DNA of 64,000 nt, taken from the NCBI RefSeq assembly GCF_003704095.1, contig NW_020844152.1, positions 1-64,000 of the forward strand, read 5' to 3'. The stretch comes from Pocillopora damicornis (Eukaryota). The translations under genes and the position numbers were made by a program. This document shows, in pieces, positions 5,122-33,222 of this stretch; the first letter of the stretch is position 1; the number at the start of each line of letters is the position of its first letter. Below the pieces are notes generated by a model. It was not told the origin of the DNA. It saw nothing but the letters and a program-made list of their open reading frames with translations, and did not search any database.

Positions 5122-7681
<2,560 letters not shown>

Positions 7682-18274: not shown

Positions 18275-21200
18275 ATGGCCTTACGACTTCACAACACCAG
18301 ACTAGTTGATGGCGGAATCTGTTGTTTTAATTTTATCTTTGAGGAGTTTTCCAGTATTGGAGAGAAAGTCTACTCAAGGCCCTTCTTTTTTGCCGGATCT
18401 CGATGGCGTTTACAAGGTGGAGTGAAAGGAGGACAGTTTGGTGTATTTCTCCGCTGGCTTGGAGGTGGGCAGCATACTGATAAAGTTAAATGCAATATCC
18501 GTTTCTCTGTGGAAGTTATCAACAACAGAGACCCTTCAAGCTCTGTACGGGTAGGAAATATGACAGAACCAGATGAGTTCCCAAGAGTAGCCTTCGGCAT
18601 TGGCTGGAGCAAGTTACTGTCTGTGGAGGAAATCGAGAGGCCCAATTCGGGCTTTCTGGACGATAACTCTTTGTTCCTGGAAGTCAAATGTTGCATGGTG
18701 CACTTTTTATTTGAGGATAAGCTGGTGATTAATTTGTCATCTCGTACTAGTTACGTGTCCAGTTCAAAATTTTCTCTGTTCGGCGAAGAATGGTACCTTG
18801 TATTGTATCCTAGAGGAGAACCCAAGAGTGACAATTCTGAAAGCCAAAAACAAGAGCACGCTGCCGTGTATCTTCACAGAGAAGAACCAGGCGTGTTAAG
18901 ATTCAAGGCCACTTACTCCATATTTGTGCGAGGAGGCCGCGAGACGCAAGTCAGTCATCATTTCTGCAACAACAACGCCAGCACAGCATTTGGCATTGAG
19001 AAGTTTGCACGCACCAAAGATCTTAAGGCTGTCTCCAAAGGAGGCTTGGTTTCCATTGGGGTCAAAATCACCAGCATCGAGCCTTACTATTACTTTGGGT
19101 TTGACACACAGGGTTGGTCGCCTCCCAACAAACTTGGAGAAGGATGTTCTATAAACGACGTGTTCCCTTTGTTGCTAAAGCCGTGCTCGAATGACAAGAA
19201 AATGTTGGATTTTAGTCTGATGTTGGACCCTGGGCCAAAATTTGAACATGCAGAACTGGAGGATAGTGCTTACTACATGAAGATCCTTTGGAGTGTCAAT
19301 GTGGTGTGTGTTAAAGATTTTAACAGAAGTGTAACCGTCAACTCTTGGGATGTCGTTGGTAAGAGCGCTTTCTGTCACAGCCAGGATGAAATGACAATGA
19401 ATACAACTCTGGAGCTAAACGAGGTACTCTTCTATTCATTTAATAATCATAAATGTTTAAGCCACCCTACCTTGTACTCCTTCTACAAATCGTTTCAGCG
19501 GTACTGGACGTTTAGGCATTTCGATTCCAACGTTTCTATTCGTGCCACTTAATCTTGTGCGTATTGGAAACGGTTTCATTCCTTTTATCCCTTATTTGAC
19601 TTTGATTCATCATAGGAGTAGACTTTTCGCAACCCTCTACTTCACTGCATCTCTGTTACATCTTTTGAGCGTTCTTATAATTAAACTTCATAAAATCAGG
19701 AATTTGGGGGGGCGGGGGTCAGTCCAAATTTAGCGAAGAGTACGATCTCTAGACGGTTGAGACATTTTGTTATTGTTTACAGCGAATGGTTCTACCAAGG
19801 TATTCAGACAGTTCAGCCCCTTTATCCCCGAAGCAAAATGCAGCGAGACGATTCCATCAAATAAGAAATATAATCCCATCCAAATTAACGATATTGAAAC
19901 AAAAATGCAATGTACAGTACTACGACAAACAAATCATTGAATGTTTTATTGCTCCTTCCCCTAGGTGTTGAACCCGCATAGCCCCTACTTGGATGACGAG
20001 AAGAATTTGGGAGTTCGCCTTGTCATGGCAAATGCAAATGAAGTTTATGATCCACTCCTGATCAACTCTGACAAACACAGCGTGGCAAAGTTGAGAGAAA
20101 TGAACGCTCAGACAAAAGCTGCTGTGGAAAATTTCTGGTAAGATTAGTGTTGCAGGAAAAGCCTTTACAAAGAGGCAATCGACTTTTTTTCCTCACGAAA
20201 ACTTGTAAAAAAAAAATTAGAGAATCGCATGTTTTGAAATTTATTTACCTAAAAACAACGCAGCCGTGGTGGAAACGCATAATCAAATAAATATTTAATT
20301 GTTTGTCAGTTACGGTATCAGGTGGATTAGATAAAGATCATTACCATCCACTTATTTCATAGGAAGGATCAATTAGACGAAATTTATTCTGAGAAAGATA
20401 GAATAATAGCTGACAAAGAAGAAGAAATCGCAGCAAAAGAAGAGGAACTAAACCAAAAAGAGGCTGCTATTCAGGCACTGGAGAACGAGATTACTGAGAG
20501 CAATGAGTATCTGGCAGAAATTGAGAGCACTGTTGATGAGGTATGGCAAGCATCTATGCTGTGAGCTAAGGACATCAAAGAAAAATAACAAAAATCCCAC
20601 TCTTTAGGAGCCCAAAGAATATTCCACTCCACTTCCTACAAAATGTTTAAGGGAAATATTGCTGGTTTATGCTCAAACGAAAACACATGCGAACCCACGC
20701 ACAGGTAGCATGATCACACAGCCACGGAACAACCTGAAAGATAAGTTAACATCGCTTCCTCTTCTGAAAATGTTTCTATGTTATGATCTCTTGGTTTTTC
20801 CTCTGTACAGATTGACGGCAAGAAAGTGAGCAGTATAAAGGATCTCGTACAGGAAGCTCAACCAGATGAAGAAGAACTTACTAAGCAACAAGAAGTTGGA
20901 GAAAAATTGAAGGCATTTTTAATGGCGAGTGTTCATTAACATTGCCTTAACACTTAATATGTGAAACACTCAATGTGTCTTAATTCCAGTTTTCTTAAGC
21001 ACTAGCGAAAAAATTCCCCACGTGAAGGACTAAAGAATTGATTTATTTTTGTATGACCTAACAGGATCGCCTCCCATTCAGCGTCAGCCGTATTTCAGTT
21101 GTTGGAGCTGCAGGACAAGGAACTACTATCAAAGGCAACAAGGAATTAGAACTGGCCGTGTTTGTCAAAGGTTAAGTGTATGTTTAAATTCTCCCTTCGC

Positions 21201-24041
21201 CATCAAGGAGTCTATCGTTTGAAAATTTTAAAATCTGACCACCGATCCCTTATCAGTGATAAAAAACTAAGCTATTTACAAATTCCTGAGGTCAAAACTT
21301 AGCTAAGCATGAGGTCAAGAAGACTGTTGTTACATAACTGTGACAAAGCAACAGCCATGTGAAAAGAACTGACAAAGTCCCATTTGTTCATTAGATCTTC
21401 CTAGAACTGAGCATAAAAGTTGGTTGCCAGCCATAGTTTTCACTATCAAGACCCTGCTGAAACAAGAAGGATCTAAACCAACAGAGAGCACAGATGACAA
21501 CCAAACGACTTCAACACTGCCACCATGTTCAGACTTTGTTACTACCTCAACATCTGTCAAGTTCAAATGTGATAGTGTGGATGTAACAATTGACCCAATG
21601 AATGACTGGGAGCAAATGGGAGGATTCGTTGGTTTATATAAACAGTGCCTTTCCCAACCAGCAGATGCTCAGCCATTGTAAGTGCACCCACAAGACATTT
21701 AAAAGAGGCCCCTCCCATTTGAGTAACACCGTGGCAACTATTGAAAGGCCCCTGAACTGAGATGTCATAAGAACTATGAAAGTAACTTAAACAAAGTGTT
21801 TTGTCGAGAAATTCTATGATTGATCATTAAGTTAATTTATCCACTAATGAGATACGTTATAGTGATGTCATAATACTAATGTAAGTCATTTGTCAGCTAT
21901 GGACCTAGCCGACTCACTGGGTAAATATCAAATCGTTTCGTATACTTTATTATCTGAGCATTTCATAACAATGTAACTTCCTTTTAGGATTCAAACTCAG
22001 TTCTTATTGTCTGGCAGTAAAAGTCATCAATAAAGATGTTTGATAACAATGAACCAAAAACCCACAACTGACAAAACACAAAGGTCATACAGTGGAATTT
22101 TTTTCTAGGGGACTCTCTGAAAACTAGAAAAATTGACCCCATACATTTAGGGGACACACTCAGGACTTGAAAAATTGAGCGCCTCTTTCTATCTATTTTC
22201 ATCTTTATCTAGCTACTTATAAGAGAATCAAAGATTCAGGAGAATTACATTCTCCATCACATCACACATTAAATTGTAAAAATGTTTGCAGACTTGATCA
22301 TAATTCAAGGCACTCAAGAACACTGAGCTGATTAAAAATTTGTATGGAAACTTTCGTAAAGTTCAGCATACTCAACAGCTTATGCATATGTCAGAAATCA
22401 TTTTTTCCTTTCTCTTGTTTTAGTTATAACATCTGCGCCTGTGAAAGACAGACAGAATTTATTTCTATACAGAATCCAAAGGTATTGTTTGGACTGTGAT
22501 TCTATGCAGGGTTTTTCTTTATCTCTCTGACTTTTTCTCAATATTCAGACAACTCAACACTCTTTGGGAAGGTATATGAACATGGTATCTCTACAAAAAC
22601 TGTATAGATTTTGTTTCTCCCTTTTTTTTTTGCATCACTGAAACTTGAAAATAAATTTTATTTAGATAAAAGAACCTCTACCCTGATACCAAAAAGGTTT
22701 CACTTGGAAAAAAAAAATCAGAACAATGTTTCTATTTCTACATTAGTGCAAGGAGCTGATCCGTATTGTCAAGGTGTGGAGTAACAGCGTTGCCTGGCGG
22801 AATACCTCATCCACACCCAGTCAGTACCTGTTGTGTCTGCTGGTGACTGCAGCTTATCAAGTGGTTCACGAGTAAGTATTTTACAAGTTCAAAATCACGC
22901 TTGTTTCTGGTATTAACAACATGCAAAATACTTTTCACAAAAATGTATATTTTGAGGTGTTTTGGGGTTAAGAGATTAATCAATATGGAATGATACAAAT
23001 ATACAAACTCTTGAATGAGAAATTTACCAAGTTACTGTATAAAAGTTCCTGTAAAAGAAAATTTGCCAATTCTTTCCTTAGAGTCATCAGTTTTCTAAAA
23101 GAAAATTATCAAAAAGTGATTGTGCAATGGCTGCTTAAACATCTTAGTAAACGCAAGCTTAAAGTTTGTTCCTTTTTCATTCCATACAAATATTAAAATG
23201 CAAAGCAGTTGTGAACACCTTTATATATCTACATACCATGTGCTTCAATGTGTTATTATGCAATGGTTGAATTCTAAAGGGGAGGTGATCAGTCTCAAGC
23301 AGTAAGAGCAGACAAAGATGTTTTCTTGGAACTTGCTGACATGGTTGGAGATGAATCTTTAGAGTAAGTTTAATAGATACCAGTACACACAACTTTTTTT
23401 AGAAAAAAAGTATTTCATATTGCATGATATTAAGAGAAGACAGCAACAGCATTTCTAAAAGTTGATAAATCTATCTATAAAATATTTCAAATTATTAGAT
23501 ACAGACAATACACATCTTTAGAAATGTGGCTTCCCTTTATCTAACTATGAAAATGGATGAATTTTTAAGCAGAGCTTATTTACTTATTTATTTATCTAAA
23601 AAAATTTAGGCTGAAGGGATTTACACTTGGGTCACCACATGACATAACATTTCATTCCTCCATTTGTTAAGTTAAGTTGGTCAGTCAGTTGGAAGTTAGC
23701 TGGCAGTGAGTTGATCAGTGACTCAGAAACTCATTGATATTCATTCAGTTTTCCCATTACTCTGTCACCCATCCATCTATCCAGCCATTCATTCAATAAT
23801 TGACTCTTTAATTTAAAGATATTTCTGACACAATAGTTTTCATCTCATTTTATCCAGAGTCTACTGGAATGAATATTACCTGGTAGAAGACTATCCCAGG
23901 GAAAATTTTCCAGTTCTATTTCAACTTCCCATTGTTCAAGACCCTGCCATTCCAACACATAATGTGGCATCTGATGGACTAGAGGACTGGGCACAATTCA
24001 GGAGAGAACTGTCAAAATGGGTTGCAAAATTAACTCTTTGA
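18275..24041 (+). CDS. MATH(x3)-coiled coil-OAS-like nucleotidyltransferase fusion protein, 817 aa
   Basis: Exons 18275-19423, 19965-20137, 20363-20540, 20811-20924 (GC donor), 21065-21170, 21395-21677, 22424-22481, 22747-22871, 23280-23363, 23858-24041. All phases are compatible, total 2454 nt with no internal stop. MATH motifs: VYSRPFFFAGSRWRL...FGIGWSKLL and SSKFSLFGEEWYLVLYPRG...AVYL...FGIEKF; the third MATH is degenerate. OAS motifs: VSRISVVGAAGQGTTIKGNKELELAVF, CERQTEFISIQNPKCKELIRIVKVW, PSQYLLCLL, VYWNEYY, PIVQDPAIPTHNVA. Confidence 0.88.
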
Positions 24042-25633: not shown

Positions 25634-28600
25634 ATGTTTAGTCCACTTGAAGATCAGGAAAACCTGCCTGTTGGGGTAATCTCATACCCTTAATGTTTCG
25701 TATTGAGGTTATTTTTAGGTCTTTTTTTTAGGTTGAGCATGTGGCGATCTGTGTGACCACGTTCTGTAAACGGAATTTAGATCGAAACGTTCTGTGTGAA
25801 CGAATTTAATCATGGCGTAGATCATGAGGCTGTATGAGAGATCTTGAATTGAAACGGTCATAGGGTTACTTTGTAATACACCAAAGATTAATCTAAAATT
25901 TATTTCAGACGGTCTCATTCGCAAAAATCCTTATGAGATGAAAATCTCAAGACTTCGTTCGAACTGATGTGAACGCCAGCTAAACACTGCCTTTTGGCCT
26001 CTTTTTTGCAGTCTCGTTTGTTCCATTTCTCCCTCGAGTCTACATGTTCAGTTTTTATCCCTTTTCAAAGCGAGTGTTTTGTCTGACGATGGTAGTTGTC
26101 CGTTTGCTGATGGTTGCTGGTGGTTAACAGAACATTCAACCACACTGAACAGGCGGGGGTTCGAGTTTTTACAAGGGAATAGGATTTTTTATTGTACCGT
26201 GTTTCTGCACTTGAAATTTTACACGTAAAGAATAGAACTGCATATGTCTTATAGCATAAACACAACATTTAACCTGGATGATCATTGATTGACAGGTGGC
26301 GGCCTTGGTTACTCCTGCCAGACGACCACTTAAGAGTGTTTTTGACAGTCGTGTGAACCATGGTACCCCAACCAGACAGCAACGTTCAGATCTGTCTAAA
26401 AAGTTTCTTTTTAAACATAAACAGAAATCAAAGAGACGCAGTGCCCCTGTGCATAACTTGTATCAGTTGATACCTGCACTGGTCAAGTCAAGAATACTAA
26501 CAGCTTCTCCAGTTCAAGAGCAAAGTCCAATAGGGAAGGAGATAAGCGGTTGTAATATGTTGTCTTTGAGTGATAAAGGAAAAGAATCTTTGACTGAGAA
26601 AGTTGTTGGAGAAATCATAAAAGAAGTAGATAAGGTTTGAATTGACCGCACATAGTCATGGCATCATTTCTACAATGTGCAAAGACCTACTTGCACAACA
26701 TTTCGATGTTGCACTTTTTGAATAAGGACACTTTGACCTTTTTGTAACAAAGTACAATGTCTATAATTTCTAAAAAGAGGTATGAGGTATCAAATCAGGT
26801 ATTTTAGTCCGCAACTAGAAACAGAAGACAGCTTAAAAAATCCCTTCCACCCATCTCACTTGTTTTGTTTTGTTTTGTTTTGTTTTTTTTCTCCTCAAAG
26901 ACTGTTATCTTAATTTCTTAATATGATGTATAATGTTTCATGTATTTCATGGTGAAAGATTTTGAGTATATTTTTGCAAGGCTCTGATTTGGCCAATATA
27001 GGTTATTATGTTAACAGTCTAAAAAAACAATTCAGTTTTTTATGACAAATAAATGAACTATTCCAAATAATCTTTGAACACCTGTGCAAAGGTCACCACA
27101 GAACTTAATAATTAATAAGTATTTTGAATGAGCATAAATTAATCCAAAGATGTTCCATAATGCATGACCATAAACAAATTGATTAATACTTTCTTTTAAC
27201 AGAGTGAATCCAAAGTGAAAGAGGAATCCATGCCAAGGAAGATGGATTCAAATGAGCTAATTATTCTGCAGATGAATAAAGAAAGATTGAGGCTTGAGAA
27301 ACAATTGTCCCAATTGATGAAGGTAAGCTTCTCCCAGACGTCTTTCTAAAATCCTTCTTTTTTTAATCTTGAATAAAATAATTTTACCTGTAATTTTTTT
27401 TGAAGTTGTTAGTTTGGAATTTTCCTATCTGAATGCCAGGTTTCAAAAAGTGAAATTTTAAATGGATTAGTTTAGAAATCAGCAATCTAAAAAATATTTG
27501 CAGGTTACAAAATTTACATATTTATCAAATCATAATGATGACATTGAATGAAATATCTGGGTTTAGAAATAAATGAGCTCATGCTAAATGCAAATATTTC
27601 AATGACATGGAACAAAAGAGAGAATTTTAGAATACTGTTGTTATATTTAAATGTAAATAAGTTATGTTAGAAGAACATTTTTTTATGTTTAATGGGTCTT
27701 CTCGAATGATGCAGGATTACTATGTAGAAATTGTTTGTTTAATATTCAAAATACAAGTTTCAAGTTAAACTGAGTGATATGAACAGATTTTCTTCTATGT
27801 TTAGTTAACAATATCATGACAAGTCTTGACTAAATTTTCAACTTGTGCAGACTGTCTAGGTAAAGATTTTTTTTCTGTCCTACAGATCATTTCACTCCAT
27901 CTATATCTCTGATTATTAATAACAGTTTCATTAACTAAGGGCTGTGCTTCAGCTAATAGTCCAGGTATCACACCTGACCAATTTATGCTTTTGTGGAACT
28001 TGTAGTACTTTTGGGTTATGAATCCAAAGCTTTTAAGAGCTTGTCAACCCAGATGTCTGAAGCATGAGCTTTCAGGTTGCCAGTGATTCCTCTTAGAGCA
28101 CTGTTTGATTATTTTGAATTGGTATTTGTATATTTCAGGAGCAGTCAAGAACAAAGAAAGTACCCAATGGTACCTCTAATTCCAATGCAACAAACACCAA
28201 TGGATTGGAAAGGGAATTAGCAAGGAAAACAAAGGAACTTTTTGAATTGAAACAGCAATTTGATCAGTTACAAGAAATGTTGTTGGAAGTTCCTGAATTG
28301 AAAAAGGACTTACATAAAAGTAAGCAAGAAACCAAGGGACTTGGTGAAGTACTTTTTGCAAGTCAGAAAAAGACTGTCCAACTAGAAGATCTCATTAAGA
28401 AACTAAACAAACAAATTAAAGACAAGGAAAAGCTGAGTGAACACTGCATGCAACTTCAAAAGAGTTTGGAGAGTATAACACAAGAAAGGGATCAAAATGG
28501 CACTGAAGTGGAGAGACTTAGGAAGGACTTAGAGCAAAAGGAAAGTGAAGTCCAAAGAAATAGAGATCACTGCATTACATTGAAAGAACTTGTAGATAGG

Positions 28601-31600
28601 CTAGAGGTGAGAAATTTCAAATATATTTTTATCACCAGAGTTTGTTTTTGCATAAGCATTGTCAGGGAAAATTGCTTCTCTTTGCAAGTAAAGAACAGGA
28701 ACCTTGGAAGTAAAGTTGACATGAAGGTCACTATATCTTGAAATGCTGACAAAAAGTGTCCCTTTTCTAATCTCTATTGACAAATTCTTTCTATATAACA
28801 TTTAATCTCTCTGGCACTTCCTTGCTGCTAAACAGATTCAGTTTCTTTGTTGTGTTTACCCTCACACACCTTGTTGGGCATGGCATGCTCAAGGTTATTA
28901 CTACTAACAAAGATGTGTTTTGGTGAAAGAGTTATTTTCAAGATAAGTCTTTGCCTTATTGAGCTCATCTGTCCAATTATCCATTAAAATTATTTGCCAG
29001 AATGCTTCTTCAGATGCAGAGCACTATGTGGCCTCCAGTAAGGAAAATGAAACAATACTGCAATATCAGGTAAAGTATCGATTTAAGCTGTGTCCTGAGT
29101 ACAATGTTGCCCAACCATGTTCTACTATTTATCGAGGTAGATTTGTCTCAACTAATTGTGAATTACACCTTTTTCTCTCCCCATTATCAGATAGATGAAC
29201 TTAGTTTATCTTTGGAGTCAAATTTGCTTGCTTTAGAGGAGGGAAAGAAACTCATTATGGAGAGAGAAGATGAGCTGAAAAAATCAAGGTAATGAATTAA
29301 CAAAAACAATAATTGTTTTGAAATTAGTTTTGTCCAAGAGCTTCCTTGTAAGCATAGTCCGATGAACCCTTTAACTCACAAGATCTACTTGTTAATTCTC
29401 CTCTCTAGCTGATATACATTTCCTTGTAAATAAGTCACAAGAATTTGGTGTTAGCTCAAGACTACTAACTTCTACCTGATAAGTTTGAGTATTCTCATCA
29501 CATGTTGGTTGGATTATTTGTGGATGTTATAGGGAGAAGTTACATGTTAGTCACCTATGGGAGTTAAAGGGTTTACTGGATGACAAAAAGTCAGCTCATG
29601 AAAAAGTGAACAATTTTTTCAAAGGAACTGTAGATTATTGGAGAAAAGATGACAGCAGAATTTGTTCAGTTCTAAGTATTATATGGAATAGTTCATCACA
29701 CATTTTACCCTATGAAACTGTGAACACTTGAATATGTAACTCACAATTTTTTTGTACCAAAAAATGGAAAAGGTACAAAACTGTTTTGTTTTTTTTTCAA
29801 TTTTAGAGAAAGTGAAAAGGAACTACGAGACCAGTATGAGAAGCAAAGTGGACAATTGAATCATTTGACAGCAGAAATTGACACAGCCAAAATGGAAATC
29901 TCAAGGCAGAAGGATGTCATAATCAGACAACAAAGGGAGATGGAAGATCTGAGAGTAAAACTTGCAAATTCCATGGAGCAAATAGAGGTACGTCATAAAT
30001 CAAGAGAACCTAGTTTTCAAGTCAAATATTTCTTTTAAATTAGGAGACTGAGACTGTTGTTTGTGAACGCTTGTTTTCTCCAAAACAGTGTACATTAATC
30101 TGTCAATTTCCCAGTTCACATCTCAATTCTTGAGTTGTTTTCAGTGAGAATCATGACGTGCACCAGCTGTTCCTATATATTCTTATGCTTGAATTTTCAC
30201 TTACAGAAATGCTACAGATGCTGGATTTATGGACTGTCACCGTGACTTGTTTTGGGGTGAAATTCTGTTGCTTCTGTTAGCTCAACATTTTCCTTTCTTT
30301 TTTTTTGTTTTTGTCATTTTCAGTACATACAGCTGCAACAACAAGAGATGAATGAATTCACGGAAGACGAACGAAGAAATCTAGAAGTTACAGTGTGTGA
30401 AATGGAAAACGAGGTACGTATGATATGAATACATTTTTTAGTCCAAAATCATTGGCCAACATCTGTGCTGGCACTGACTACAGAAAAGTCTTGTCTTTCT
30501 TTTGTTTGTAGTTGAAGCTGACCAAACAAGAAAGAACACAAATAAATGCTTCTTTGAGGCGGAAGTCTGAGAAGTATGATGAACTCGTTCAAGAGGTGAA
30601 ACAATCTAGGTAAGGACTTCAATCACATGACTGTATTGTAAGAATAAAGTATGTACTCGGCGTAGATTCCCCGTGTGCTGTTTTTTTGGCAAACTAAATC
30701 ATGTTGCCTCGTTGGTTTTTAAAGAGGCCTTGTTTTAGGCAAATAGTAGGTTATACAGCCATACCACAACTTTCCAATTTGTATCTCTACTTTTCTAGGG
30801 ATCTGTTGCAAGATAAGCAGGAGGAATTGGATGCCACGCAGTCCCAGGCTCACTGGATTGTCTTACAGCAAGAAGCAATGATAACAGACACCACAAAAGA
30901 GCTGAGCGAAATATGCGATCTTGTTAATGATCTGCTCGTGGAATTCAACAAGGAAGCGTTTGCGATACAGGTAAATCCGAATTACTGTATTCGTGTTAAC
31001 TTAGGTATCAATTGCTACTGTTCTCTTATTCATCGAATTTTTTGGACGGATTGTTTAGTCCTTTATTTCTACCTCTAGGTCGACGATGACGAGAAGGCAA
31101 AACTGGATGAGCTTAAGTCAAGTACCCCAGAATATGACCCAAGCAAGAAGTACTCAGTGCCTCCGAATAAGTCTCTTGTACAGAGTATTTTAGAAGCAAC
31201 AGCAGTGAGGGATAGAAACCTGGAATTTAAAACGGTGAAAACATCTCAGCTTAAAATAGTTTGAAATTTTGAGCTCCTTTCTCTGAAGTCTGAAGGCCTT
31301 AATGTTTTGCCTGCTTATGTTGCTATTCAAAATGCATACTCATAGTATCGAAGATTTCGTTGATTTTTAAAGCAAGTTTGTGGCGACTTTACTGATATGG
31401 AAGTTGTTTGATTTACTTCTCAGCCAGAGAAACGTTGTCACAAGTTAAGCCCCATTCCTGAAGTAATCGAGGAAGATCAAGACTGTTCTCAAATTTCTGA
31501 AGAAGAAGAAGAGAAACTACCTTCACTCACTGCGCAAGCGGTGGAACTTAAACAAGCCTTAATAGAATTGACGGAGATATGTAGAAAAAACATCTTCACG

Positions 31601-33222
31601 GTTCAGACGCAAAATAGTGTTGGTAGATTGTTACAAGAGAGGTACATCATGAGTAAATCGTTTCTCGAAACTTTTGATTTTGTCTTAAATAACTGAAAAA
31701 TAAATTGAAGGGTAGAGCATTCCTAGCTGACAAATTATACTAATAAAAAGCTTACCTCTTCTCCTATACCCAGGATTTTATTAAAGAAAGAACACAGGTC
31801 TTCTCTTGATGAAGTCATGATGCAGCTTGAGGAATCAAGAAAATCCGAAACAAATCTGGGTCGAGAAATCTCAAAAAAGGACAACCAGATAACTACACTG
31901 CAACAGCAACTTGAGGAAAGCAGAAATGATTTACACCATTCATTTCAAAAGATTGAATCGCTCAGCGAGCAGTATGAAAAGACCATAGACCAACAGGCCA
32001 AAATAACGGTAAATTTTGCTTCATGTTATTCGCATTTTCGAGGGCGTGTTTGTATACTACTCAGTTAGCTTATCGAAGAACTAAGTCATTTTTCAAAGGC
32101 AGTAAAAAAAAAGAGGACGTCCATGGCCTACCAAATGTAAATATTTTGCAACACTAGAAGTCCAATTTGTAACTTTTTTTACCCTTGGGTGTCAGCAAAG
32201 TTGAAGTGTCATTTGTTCAAAAATTTAACCAATTTGAAAATCGTGAACAGTGTTGTTTTGTAATTTACGCTTGTGACATGGTGTACTTTCCAGGAGCTGG
32301 CCAACGATGTACGGCGTTTCTCCGAGCAAGTGAAAACCCTCCAAAACGAGAAAGAAAGCTTGTCGCAACAACTGAAAGAAAGCCTTGATACATTGAACCA
32401 ACTGTCACACGTGCCATCGAAAGAACCCGACCTTCACAAATCCCAAGACGTCCTTGGCAAACTATTAGCAGAAAAATTCAACCTAGAGGATCAGGTATTC
32501 ACAAAACTCGTAAACAGTAAAACAAGTGGGCAGCCGCATATTTTCCCGCCAAAATGACACTAGTTCACTCGTGTGACCATGCTCTGTTAATATCTTAGTG
32601 TGTCAGACGGTCTGTCGGTCTGTCAGCCTAACTGGGTAAGTTTCTTTGATCCAAAATTATGTGTTGAAATGAAAGCCAAGAGTATTCCTATTAAAATAGA
32701 TACCCAGGTTAGACATGTGTCTATCTAACAACTGCACTGTTTTTCTTCAGGTTCGTAAGCTGAAAGAGAAGTCCGTGACATATCGACTCGAAACACAGGA
32801 TCATATGATTGAATACAAATGTAGAACAGAATCGAAGGTAAAGATCTTGCGGAGAGGGTTTATCGTAATCCTGCCCCCACGCCCCCTTCCTTATGATTCC
32901 ACATACCCCTCCCCTCATCTCCTCCCCTCTGCACTTCTCATTCCCAGTCTCTTTCCTTCAGATGCGTGTCCTTGAGAGTAACATCCGAAAAGCAGAGACT
33001 GAAATTTTTCGACTGGATGGCTTGGTAGAAAAGATTAGACTCGTAAGTATCGCAAGAGATGGATAATTTATCATGGCGTTGCATTCCATAACTATTAAAT
33101 TATCAAGTTCAGTGATATAATTTCTCTTTATACAGGTCCTTCACCAGTATGATGACGTAATACGAAGCTGCCCGGAGTTGAACAAGTTGCTTTATTTTCT
33201 AGATGGCGAAGATATTCAATAA
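25634..33222 (+). CDS. SPAG5: Long coiled-coil protein, Astrin/SPAG5-like, 913 aa
   Basis: 17 in-phase exons: 25634-25675, 26296-26634, 27203-27322, 28139-28606, 29001-29069, 29191-29288, 29807-29987, 30324-30413, 30512-30609, 30799-30970, 31079-31234, 31424-31641, 31774-32008, 32294-32494, 32751-32837, 32962-33042, 33136-33222. The C-terminus RVLESNIRKAETEIFRLDGLVEKIRLVLHQYDDVIRSCPELNKLLYFL resembles the remembered Astrin tail NILEENLRRSDKELEKLDDIVQHIYKTLLSIPEVVRGCKELQGLLEFL. The gene structure is more certain than the name. Confidence 0.7.
29366..29574. mobile_element. TTAA-MITE copy
   Basis: aaccctttaactc...ggagttaaagggtt; the body is similar to 6674-6885. Confidence 0.78.

What the first reader, a model, noticed from the sequence alone, without database searches (positions are those of the whole stretch)
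21065..21677. OAS catalytic triad replaced by E/E/T, the same pattern as inactive human OASL
Seen: GNKELELAVF and DSVDVTIDP, and GAAG instead of GSSG in the P-loop. Known (from memory): active OAS1 has GRSDADLVVF and VEFDVLP (D75/D77/D148); human OASL has REVELVAF and TVTIVP, lacks 2-5A synthetase activity and works as an RNA-binding co-factor fused to ubiquitin-like domains. Inference: a cnidarian OAS independently became a pseudo-enzyme fused to signalling domains, converging on Glu-Glu-Thr, which hints that this combination keeps a function such as nucleotide binding or an altered product. A ~20-aa Ser/Thr/acidic insert (EGSKPTESTDDNQTTSTLPP) lies between the strands.
Basis: partly seen in the sequence, partly recalled or inferred. 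Interest (0 to 1): 0.82.

Follow-up and report, generated by a model that had tools for sequence, protein, structure and literature searches.

The report
Coral MATH-fused OAS-like pseudoenzyme
These two exons belong to an expressed, conserved coral gene that joins three TRAF-like MATH domains and a coiled coil to an OAS-like domain with a degenerate active site; its exact Glu/Glu/Thr match to human OASL is peculiar to this lineage, since related corals read Glu/Asp/Val.

Summary
Window 21065-21170 and 21395-21677 are exons 5 and 6 of a 10-exon, 817-aa gene (18275-24041, + strand). RNA contigs from four studies confirm every splice junction. HMMER aligns exon 5 to human OAS1 51-82: S63/S64 read A/A, K66 reads Q, D75 and D77 read E. 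Thr638 sits where D148 is expected. That register rests on the P-x-N-D anchor and a predicted strand, not on a superposition.

Seven orthologous loci (the window and six others, two of them near-identical) always have Glu first. The second residue is Asp everywhere except in the window. The third is Val or Thr here, and Ala in one of the 18 exon-6 sequences, never acidic. So loss of the third carboxylate is old and conserved. The exact E/E/T pattern is a terminal-branch coincidence, not a constrained combination.

The domain is under strong purifying selection (dN/dS about 0.1). It is the only OAS locus found in a genome with at least 51 cGLR (Mab-21) matches. It is acidic (pI about 4.8), which argues against OAS1-style dsRNA binding.

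Best reading: an independently evolved OAS-family pseudoenzyme that signals through MATH domains. Catalysis was not tested.

The parts
18275..19423 (+). Exon 1 (aa 1-383): start codon and tandem MATH/TRAF-like beta-sandwich domains
   Evidence: Pfam MATH_2 E 1.7e-19. AlphaFold pLDDT 86.3, showing three beta-rich blocks. Foldseek matches the USP7 TRAF domain and SPOP MATH at E 1e-8, TMt 0.75-0.80. Met1 is invariant in 16 relatives.
19965..20137 (+). Exon 2 (aa 384-441), linker
   Evidence: RNA joints 19423>19965 and 20137>20363 in 4 runs.
20363..20540 (+). Exon 3 (aa 441-500), acidic coiled coil
   Evidence: Only weak Pfam matches, all to coiled-coil families. RNA joints. pI of aa 384-538 is 4.4.
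20811..20924 (+). Exon 4 (aa 501-538), start of the OAS-like domain; followed by a GC-AG intron at 20925-21064
   Evidence: Joint 20923/4>21064/5 in all 4 runs. The splice context reads ATG|gcgagt ... aacag|GAT.
21065..21170 (+). Exon 5 (aa 539-574): P-loop and the strand that carries the first two metal ligands
   Evidence: Aligned to human OAS1 51-82.
21104..21121 (+). Codons G552-A553-A554-G555-Q556-G557, equivalent to OAS1 G62-S63-S64-G65-K66-G67
   Evidence: Q is invariant in orthologs. Ser is kept only in L013.
21143..21151 (+). Codons E565-L566-E567 (gaa tta gaa), equivalent to OAS1 D75-A76-D77 and OASL E81-V82-E83
   Evidence: All six other loci read E-x-D.
21395..21677 (+). Exon 6 (aa 574-668): helix, variable acidic loop, three strands, helices
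   Evidence: AlphaFold of the exon alone gives helix 9-25, disorder at 27-38 and strands 44-49, 54-58 and 61-65 (pLDDT 63).
21466..21525 (+). Ser/Thr/acidic loop (aa 598-617)
   Evidence: Its sequence varies among orthologs, and it is 10 residues shorter in L003 and P0038. pLDDT is below 50.
21586..21588 (+). Codon T638 (aca), the inferred equivalent of OAS1 D148 and OASL T152
   Evidence: It lies three residues before the invariant Pro of P-x-N-D-W. Orthologs read V, T or A here. The register is inferred, not superposed.
22424..22481 (+). Exon 7 (aa 668-687)
   Evidence: RNA joints. Highly conserved in orthologs.
22747..22871 (+). Exon 8 (aa 688-729): C-lobe helix carrying the equivalents of OAS1 K206, R210, K213, Q229 and Y230
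   Evidence: The ortholog profile aligns to OAS2 560-598 (E 0.0034) and to OAS1 205/206-241. Pfam OAS1_C E 0.0058.
23280..23363 (+). Exon 9 (aa 729-757)
   Evidence: The joint 22871>23280 in 3 runs corrected my first guess of 23307.
23858..24041 (+). Exon 10 (aa 757-817 plus stop): end of the OAS1_C domain; no ubiquitin-like tail follows
   Evidence: Pfam OAS1_C 28.6 bits, above the 19.9 cut-off. PDB matches to OAS2, OASL and OAS1.

Best explanation
The finding covers exons 5 and 6 of a single-copy, expressed coral gene. The gene encodes an 817-aa protein: three MATH (TRAF-like) domains, an acidic coiled coil, and an OAS-family nucleotidyltransferase-fold domain.

The OAS-like active site is degenerate in the whole coral clade sampled. 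The P-loop Ser is Ala in most lineages, the P-loop Lys is Gln in all, and the first metal ligand is Glu in all. The third ligand is a beta-branched or small neutral residue (Val, Thr or Ala) in all. In the window's lineage the second ligand also changed from Asp to Glu and the third reads Thr. That yields the same E/E/T string as human OASL, by coincidence.

The most likely function (inferred, not shown) is a catalytically dead OAS-like module. It would keep its fold, and perhaps a C-lobe nucleotide or ligand pocket, and would act as a sensor or scaffold. Its output would be oligomerisation through the coiled coil and partner recruitment through the MATH peptide-binding domains. This is analogous to human OASL, which signals through ubiquitin-like domains, and evolved independently of it.
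For: - Gene model and expression: all nine splice junctions appear in polyA RNA contigs of four studies, and the ORF is intact at 817 aa.
- OAS family: OAS1_C lies above the Pfam cut-off, with PDB hits to OAS2, OASL and OAS1.
- Register of the first two ligands and the P-loop.
- Conservation: orthologous loci L003, L008, L009, L010 and L015 carry MATH, coiled coil and OAS exons in the same order. L013/L014 (near-identical) carry exons 4-10.
- Key-position table: K66 equivalent is Q in 7 of 7; D75 equivalent is E in 7 of 7; D77 equivalent is D in 6 and E in the window only; D148 equivalent is V in 5 and T in 2.
- Third position in 18 exon-6 sequences: V in 12, T in 5, A in 1.
- Purifying selection: dN/dS is 0.08-0.13 in the OAS domain and 0.05-0.08 in the MATH region.
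- Copy number: exons 5, 6 and 10 and Pfam OAS1_C each find only this locus in the 234-Mb genome.
- MATH fold.
- Literature: the third carboxylate is required. OASL T152 is given as part of the reason for its inactivity, and restoring D-D-D restores 2-5A synthesis.
Against: - No enzyme assay exists, and no structure of the joined domain could be predicted here, so the D148 register rests on a motif anchor and a low-confidence exon-only model.
- Two carboxylates remain. In the window Asp stands at -2 and +2 of Thr638, on the same strand face.
- C-lobe residues equivalent to OAS1 R210, K213, Q229 and Y230 are conserved, which fits retained nucleotide binding and leaves residual or altered catalysis possible.
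- One ortholog (L013) keeps the P-loop Gly-Ser.
- The sensing ligand is unknown. The domain is acidic (pI 4.8), so dsRNA sensing like OAS1 or OASL is not supported.
Confidence: 0.62

Rival explanations
1. The domain is still an active nucleotidyltransferase. It would use a non-canonical metal site (Glu, Asp/Glu and another carboxylate or water) and possibly make a product other than 2-5A.
For: - The polymerase triad accepts Glu as well as Asp.
- C-lobe positions equivalent to OAS1 R210, K213, Q229 and Y230 are conserved.
- Exon 5 is as conserved as the rest of the domain, and dN/dS is about 0.1.
- The window has Asp at -2 and +2 of Thr638.
- Exon 6 holds an always-acidic position (D/E at exon-6 residue 46) and a nearly fixed Asp at residue 59.
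Against: - The third ligand position is never acidic in 18 sequences.
- The flanking Asp residues of the window are Asn, Leu or Met in most orthologs, so they cannot be a conserved catalytic solution.
- The P-loop Ser and Lys equivalents are also lost.
- In OAS-family proteins, mutating the three Asp positions abolishes activity.
Confidence: 0.15
2. One reading: Glu-Glu-Thr is a selectively favoured combination, reached convergently in corals and in human OASL because it preserves a specific function such as nucleotide binding.
For: - The window does read E/E/T, identical to human OASL E81/E83/T152.
- Thr also occurs at the third position in L013, P0031, P0042 and P0039.
Against: - Six of seven loci keep Asp at the second position, and 12 of 18 exon-6 sequences have Val at the third.
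- The one locus outside the window with Thr and a known exon 5 (L013) reads E/D/T.
- The changes are conservative: Asp to Glu needs one base change, and Val, Ala and Thr interchange on a beta-strand.
- Same-genus relatives could not be sampled, so no selection on the combination can be shown.
Confidence: 0.06
3. The locus is a decaying or mis-assembled gene and the odd residues are drift in a pseudogene.
For: The active-site residues are degenerate. Exon 6 finds no solved OAS by sequence.
Against: - The ORF across 10 exons is intact and correctly spliced polyA RNA is seen in four studies.
- Exon structure is conserved across seven loci.
- dN/dS is about 0.1 with saturated dS.
Confidence: 0.02

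Closest known systems
Human OASL (OAS-like domain plus two ubiquitin-like domains; PDB 4XQ7)
   Same: - An OAS-fold domain with an incomplete triad that reads E/E/T (E81/E83/T152), aligned in register with the coral E-x-E/D (PMC6019448).
- The P-loop Lys is replaced by an amide residue.
- The domain is fused to protein-interaction domains.
   Different: - The partner domains are N-terminal MATH x3 plus a coiled coil, not a C-terminal ubiquitin-like tandem.
- The clade-wide coral state is E/D/V.
- The coral domain is acidic (pI 4.8), whereas OASL binds dsRNA.
- The origin is independent, since avian OASL and mouse Oasl2 keep D-D-D.
Human and porcine OAS1 (PDB 4IG8, 1PX5)
   Same: - The N-lobe P-loop and beta-2 segment and the C-lobe helices align.
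- The OAS1_C domain is present.
- Equivalents of K206, R210, K213, Q229 and Y230 are kept.
   Different: - S63, K66 and D148 equivalents are lost, and D75 is Glu.
- The basic dsRNA-groove positions K60, R195 and K199 read V, T and S. K60 comes; R195 and K199 are aligned by eye.
- The exon-6 region is too diverged for sequence search.
TRAF-C / MATH domain proteins (TRAFs, USP7 N-terminal domain, SPOP)
   Same: The N-terminal 383 residues fold as MATH beta-sandwiches. As in TRAFs, a coiled coil lies next to them.
   Different: - There is no RING or TRAF zinc finger, no BTB domain and no protease domain.
- Three MATH units stand in tandem at the N-terminus.
- The coiled coil follows the MATH domains instead of preceding them.
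Cnidarian OAS genes reported earlier (Nematostella OAS1, Acropora digitifera, Orbicella faveolata)
   Same: OAS-family genes in Anthozoa. The Nematostella gene responds to poly(I:C) and to heat stress (PMC8476169; PMC12530282; PMC6307210).
   Different: Those papers mention neither a MATH fusion nor a degenerate triad. Whether their genes are orthologs of this one was not tested here.

Membership tests
OAS family (CD-NTase, OAS superfamily) | OAS1_C domain (PF10421) above Pfam's cut-off | tested here: met
   Exon 10 scores 28.6 bits against a cut-off of 19.9. Exon 8 scores 16.7 bits on adjacent profile positions. The genome scan finds the same place.
OAS family (CD-NTase, OAS superfamily) | N-lobe P-loop and beta-2 segment alignable to OAS1 | tested here: met
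   Gapless alignment to OAS1 51-82, E 0.066 for the single sequence and 0.014 for the profile. OAS proteins are the top hits.
OAS family (CD-NTase, OAS superfamily) | Three carboxylate metal ligands (D75, D77, D148 in hOAS1) | tested here: not met
   The first two are Glu (carboxylates kept). The third is Thr in the window and V, T or A in 18 orthologous sequences. The register of the third is inferred from the Pro/Asp anchor.
OAS family (CD-NTase, OAS superfamily) | Gly-Ser of the NTase motif and the P-loop Lys (S63, K66) | tested here: not met
   A553 and Q556 in the window. Gln is invariant, and Ser is kept only in L013.
OAS family (CD-NTase, OAS superfamily) | dsRNA-stimulated 2'-5' oligoadenylate synthesis | not testable with these tools
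   Needs a biochemical assay.
OAS family (CD-NTase, OAS superfamily) | Basic dsRNA-binding groove | tested here: inconclusive
   Domain pI is 4.8 in all orthologs. K60 reads V. R195 and K199 read T and S only by an alignment made by eye, because the exon-7 profile found no OAS.
OASL-type pseudoenzyme | OAS-like domain with the third carboxylate replaced | tested here: met
   T638 in the window, compared with OASL T152.
OASL-type pseudoenzyme | C-terminal tandem ubiquitin-like domains | tested here: not met
   The ORF stops at 24041, at the end of OAS1_C. RNA contigs support this last exon.
OASL-type pseudoenzyme | Common descent with vertebrate OASL | not tested
   No tree with vertebrate sequences could be built. 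Independence is inferred because avian OASL and mouse Oasl2 keep D-D-D.
MATH/TRAF-domain proteins | MATH beta-sandwich fold | tested here: met
   Pfam MATH_2 E 1.7e-19. AlphaFold pLDDT 86. Foldseek matches to the USP7 and SPOP MATH domains.
MATH/TRAF-domain proteins | RING and TRAF-type zinc fingers of canonical TRAFs | tested here: not met
   No such Pfam match in exons 1-4 at E up to 1.
cGLR / Mab-21 family | Mab-21 domain (PF03281) | tested here: not met
   No Mab-21 match in any exon at E up to 1. None of the 51 Mab-21 places in the genome lies in this window.

The most novel reading that the evidence does not exclude
The OAS-like domain has lost synthesis but kept a C-lobe nucleotide pocket. 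It would then act as a receptor for a nucleotide second messenger, for instance a product of one of the coral's many cGLRs, or for a viral ligand. Binding would be converted into TRAF-like signalling through coiled-coil oligomerisation and three MATH domains. That would be a synthase-turned-receptor, a new class of innate immune adaptor in corals.
Probability: 0.1. Interest if true: 0.8.

Novelty: new variant of a known kind. Interest (0 to 1): 0.45.

Why it matters
OAS enzymes are among the oldest antiviral sensors of eukaryotes, and human OASL is the textbook case of an OAS that lost catalysis and became a signalling co-factor. This coral gene shows the same kind of transition happening independently and long ago, with a different output module (MATH x3 plus a coiled coil). 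It occurred in a genome whose only detectable OAS-family gene is this one, while cGLRs are greatly expanded. That makes a concrete question testable: what a catalytically degenerate OAS fold does in an animal without interferon or RNase L. The result also corrects a tempting over-reading. The exact E/E/T identity with OASL is not conserved even among corals, so it carries no functional message of its own.

Tried and rejected
- My first hand-built model had exon 9 starting at 23307. The RNA joint 22871>23280 corrected it.
- Exon 6, alone or as a 14-sequence profile, found no OAS in the PDB. Exon 8 alone found none, but its profile did. The 19-residue exon-7 profile found no OAS.
- AlphaFold on exon 6 alone gave only a low-confidence model (pLDDT 63). 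Foldseek on that model returned nothing meaningful.
- The ESM Atlas search of exon 6 gave only sub-threshold bacterial hypotheticals.
- No full-length spliced protein id exists in either protein library. The HMMER search of 1.84 billion representatives with exon 1 returned only exon-sized ORFs, and two word-index searches returned only genomic exon-6 ORFs.
- For that reason the joined OAS domain was not sent to Pfam, the PDB search, structure prediction or fold search. That joined step was left out. The joined model was used only inside my own scripts, for tblastn against fetched loci, dN/dS, pI and a tree.
- The tree of seven loci was unresolved apart from the long L003 branch, so polarity rests on parsimony.
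- The short contigs L011, L012, L016 and L019 did not contain exon 5. P0003's contig gave no DNA.
- I guessed that the ORF at 5176-6141 was the HEPN neighbour seen in L003. It is a cytidylyltransferase-like ORF, so that synteny idea was dropped.


Full report
**What is there**

Reading 21065-21173 in frame 1 gives the peptide with VVGAAGQGTT and GNKELELAVF. Reading 21397-21681 gives the acidic Ser/Thr stretch and KFKCDSVDVTIDPMNDW. The two stretches are separated by a GT-AG intron and sit in a larger gene.

I built a ten-exon model by hand and checked it against RNA. Contigs of four polyA RNA-seq runs from four different studies show every junction. These include a GC-AG intron between exons 4 and 5. 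They also show an acceptor at 23280 where I had guessed 23307.

The corrected exons are:
- 18275-19423
- 19965-20137
- 20363-20540
- 20811-20924
- 21065-21170
- 21395-21677
- 22424-22481
- 22747-22871
- 23280-23363
- 23858-24041

They give an uninterrupted 817-codon ORF. The finding's coordinates are exactly the start of exon 5 and the end of exon 6.

**Family and register**

Searched exon by exon, Pfam finds MATH domains in exon 1 (E 1.7e-19). Exon 3 gives only weak matches, all to coiled-coil families. OAS1_C appears in exon 8 (16.7 bits) and exon 10 (28.6 bits, cut-off 19.9). No Mab-21 match appears anywhere. Exon 10 matches solved OAS2, OASL and OAS1.

Exon 5 aligns without gaps to human OAS1 residues 51-82. 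A profile of seven orthologous exon-5 sequences repeats this at E 0.014 and also aligns to human OASL 66-87. In that register:

| Window residue | hOAS1 equivalent | Note |
|---|---|---|
| G552 | G62 | kept |
| A553, A554 | S63, S64 | Ser lost |
| Q556 | K66 | Lys lost |
| E565 | D75 | OASL reads E here |
| E567 | D77 | OASL reads E here |

Exon 6 is too diverged for sequence search. Thr638 is therefore assigned to the D148 position on two grounds. It lies three residues before an invariant Pro followed by x-N-D, which mirrors the OAS1 D-V-L-P-A-F-D motif as I recall it. AlphaFold on exon 6 alone also predicts the third of three strands at exon-6 residues 61-65 (low confidence).

Literature confirms that human OASL reads E81/E83/T152. 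T152 is given as part of the reason for its inactivity, and restoring three Asp restores 2-5A synthesis (PMC4446440; PMC6019448).

**Orthologs**

A full HMMER scan of 1.84 billion representatives with exon 1 returned only exon-sized ORFs. Their contigs, and those of exon-6 ORFs found by two word-index searches, gave genomic loci from other coral assemblies and read sets.

L003, L008, L009, L010 and L015 carry the MATH exon, the coiled-coil exons and all OAS exons in the same order. L013 and L014, which are near-identical, carry exons 4-10. The fusion is therefore conserved across lineages whose synonymous sites are saturated (dS of 1 or more).

The key positions:

| hOAS1 position | State in the seven loci |
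|---|---|
| K66 | Gln in all seven |
| D75 | Glu in all seven |
| D77 | Asp in six, Glu only in the window |
| D148 | Val in five, Thr in the window and L013 |
| S63 | Ala in six, Ser in L013 |

Among 18 exon-6 sequences the third position reads Val in 12, Thr in 5 and Ala in 1. It is never acidic.

The Asp residues that flank Thr638 in the window (VDVTIDP) are Asn and Leu or Met in most orthologs. They cannot be a conserved replacement.

The tree is star-like with L003 as a long outgroup. By parsimony the clade's state is E/D/V, and the window's E/E/T arose on its own branch.

**Is it functional**

Pairwise Nei-Gojobori dN/dS between the window and the orthologs is 0.08-0.13 for the OAS-like domain and 0.05-0.08 for the MATH region. 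With the RNA evidence, this excludes a pseudogene.

C-lobe positions equivalent to OAS1 K206, R210, K213 and Y230 are conserved. The Q229 equivalent is kept in five of seven loci. From my memory of the OAS1 literature these residues contact the nucleotides, so a ligand pocket may persist.

The OAS-like domain is acidic in every ortholog, with pI about 4.8 and net charge about -11. K60 reads Val. By an eye alignment of exon 7, R195 and K199 read Thr and Ser. OAS1-like dsRNA binding is therefore doubtful.

**Genomic context**

In the 234-Mb assembly, Pfam OAS1_C and exons 5, 6 and 10 each find only this locus. Mab-21 finds at least 51 places, several in tandem clusters. These exon-wise searches give lower bounds, but they suggest this is the coral's only OAS-family gene.

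The RNA runs are labelled coral or marine metagenomes. The assembly size and contig count match what I recall for a pocilloporid coral, which is an inference only.

**N-terminal half**

AlphaFold on the contiguous exon 1 with 16 relatives gives pLDDT 86 and three beta-sandwich blocks. Foldseek matches the USP7 TRAF-like domain and SPOP MATH domains at E about 1e-8, TMt 0.75-0.80. These are peptide-binding modules. No RING or zinc finger is present, so this is not a canonical TRAF.

**Mechanism proposed**

Shown:
- a conserved, expressed MATH x3, coiled-coil, OAS-like protein;
- a conserved absence of the third carboxylate and of the P-loop Lys;
- strong purifying selection.

Inferred:
- the domain cannot catalyse two-metal nucleotidyl transfer;
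- it serves as a ligand-binding or scaffold module;
- its signal is passed on by coiled-coil oligomerisation and MATH-mediated recruitment.

This works like human OASL in outline: an OAS fold without synthesis, joined to a protein-interaction output. It is not a member of the OASL lineage. It has no ubiquitin-like domains, and avian OASL and mouse Oasl2 still have D-D-D, so the OASL loss happened within mammals.

Glu at the first two positions is not evidence of inactivity, because the triad accepts Asp or Glu. The weight lies on the third position and the P-loop.

The pseudoenzyme-with-fusion idea is supported as the best reading but remains untested biochemically. The claim of meaningful convergence on Glu-Glu-Thr is not supported.

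The Ser/Thr/acidic insert is real. It is a variable, probably disordered loop, 10 residues shorter in the L003 clade.

I found no paper describing a MATH-OAS fusion or a degenerate triad in cnidarian OAS genes. The library is incomplete.

**Left out**

It was therefore not sent to Pfam, the PDB sequence search, structure prediction or fold search. The joined model was used only in my own scripts.

I tested and agree with it.

Noticed in passing
window 5176-6141 (+): Intact 321-aa single-exon ORF with a strong cytidylyltransferase-like match (PF01467, E 3e-47). It is unrelated to the OAS gene.
   Followed up: partly
own genome: C2558 29-97 kb, C3576 678-685 kb, C2992 390-419 kb and about 40 other places: At least 51 Mab-21 (cGLR) matches, many as long intronless open frames in tandem clusters, against a single OAS locus.
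   Followed up: no
window 20925-21064: GC-AG intron (donor ATG|gcgagt), confirmed by RNA contigs in all four runs.
   Followed up: yes
window 26000-32100 (+): A run of ORF pieces rich in Glu, Lys and Leu heptad-like sequence (for example 28205-28741, 29856-30038, 31817-32068). They suggest a long coiled-coil protein gene downstream. The 28205-28741 piece has no Pfam match.
   Followed up: no
L003 1-8265: In this distant ortholog's contig, the MATH-OAS gene lies just downstream of a giant sacsin-like ORF (PF25794) and a 321-aa HEPN ORF. The window has no such neighbour.
   Followed up: partly
window 21677-22425 and 21775-22079: One run (X1) shows a variant joint one base off the main acceptor with an extra C, and an odd AT..CA joint inside intron 6 with 17 unmatched letters. 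Both have low depth and are probably assembly noise or minor isoforms.
   Followed up: no
window 21540 and 18553, 18769: All four RNA runs differ from the assembly at these bases. T>G at 21540 is synonymous in a Val codon. These look like fixed differences between the sequenced individual and the sampled populations.
   Followed up: partly
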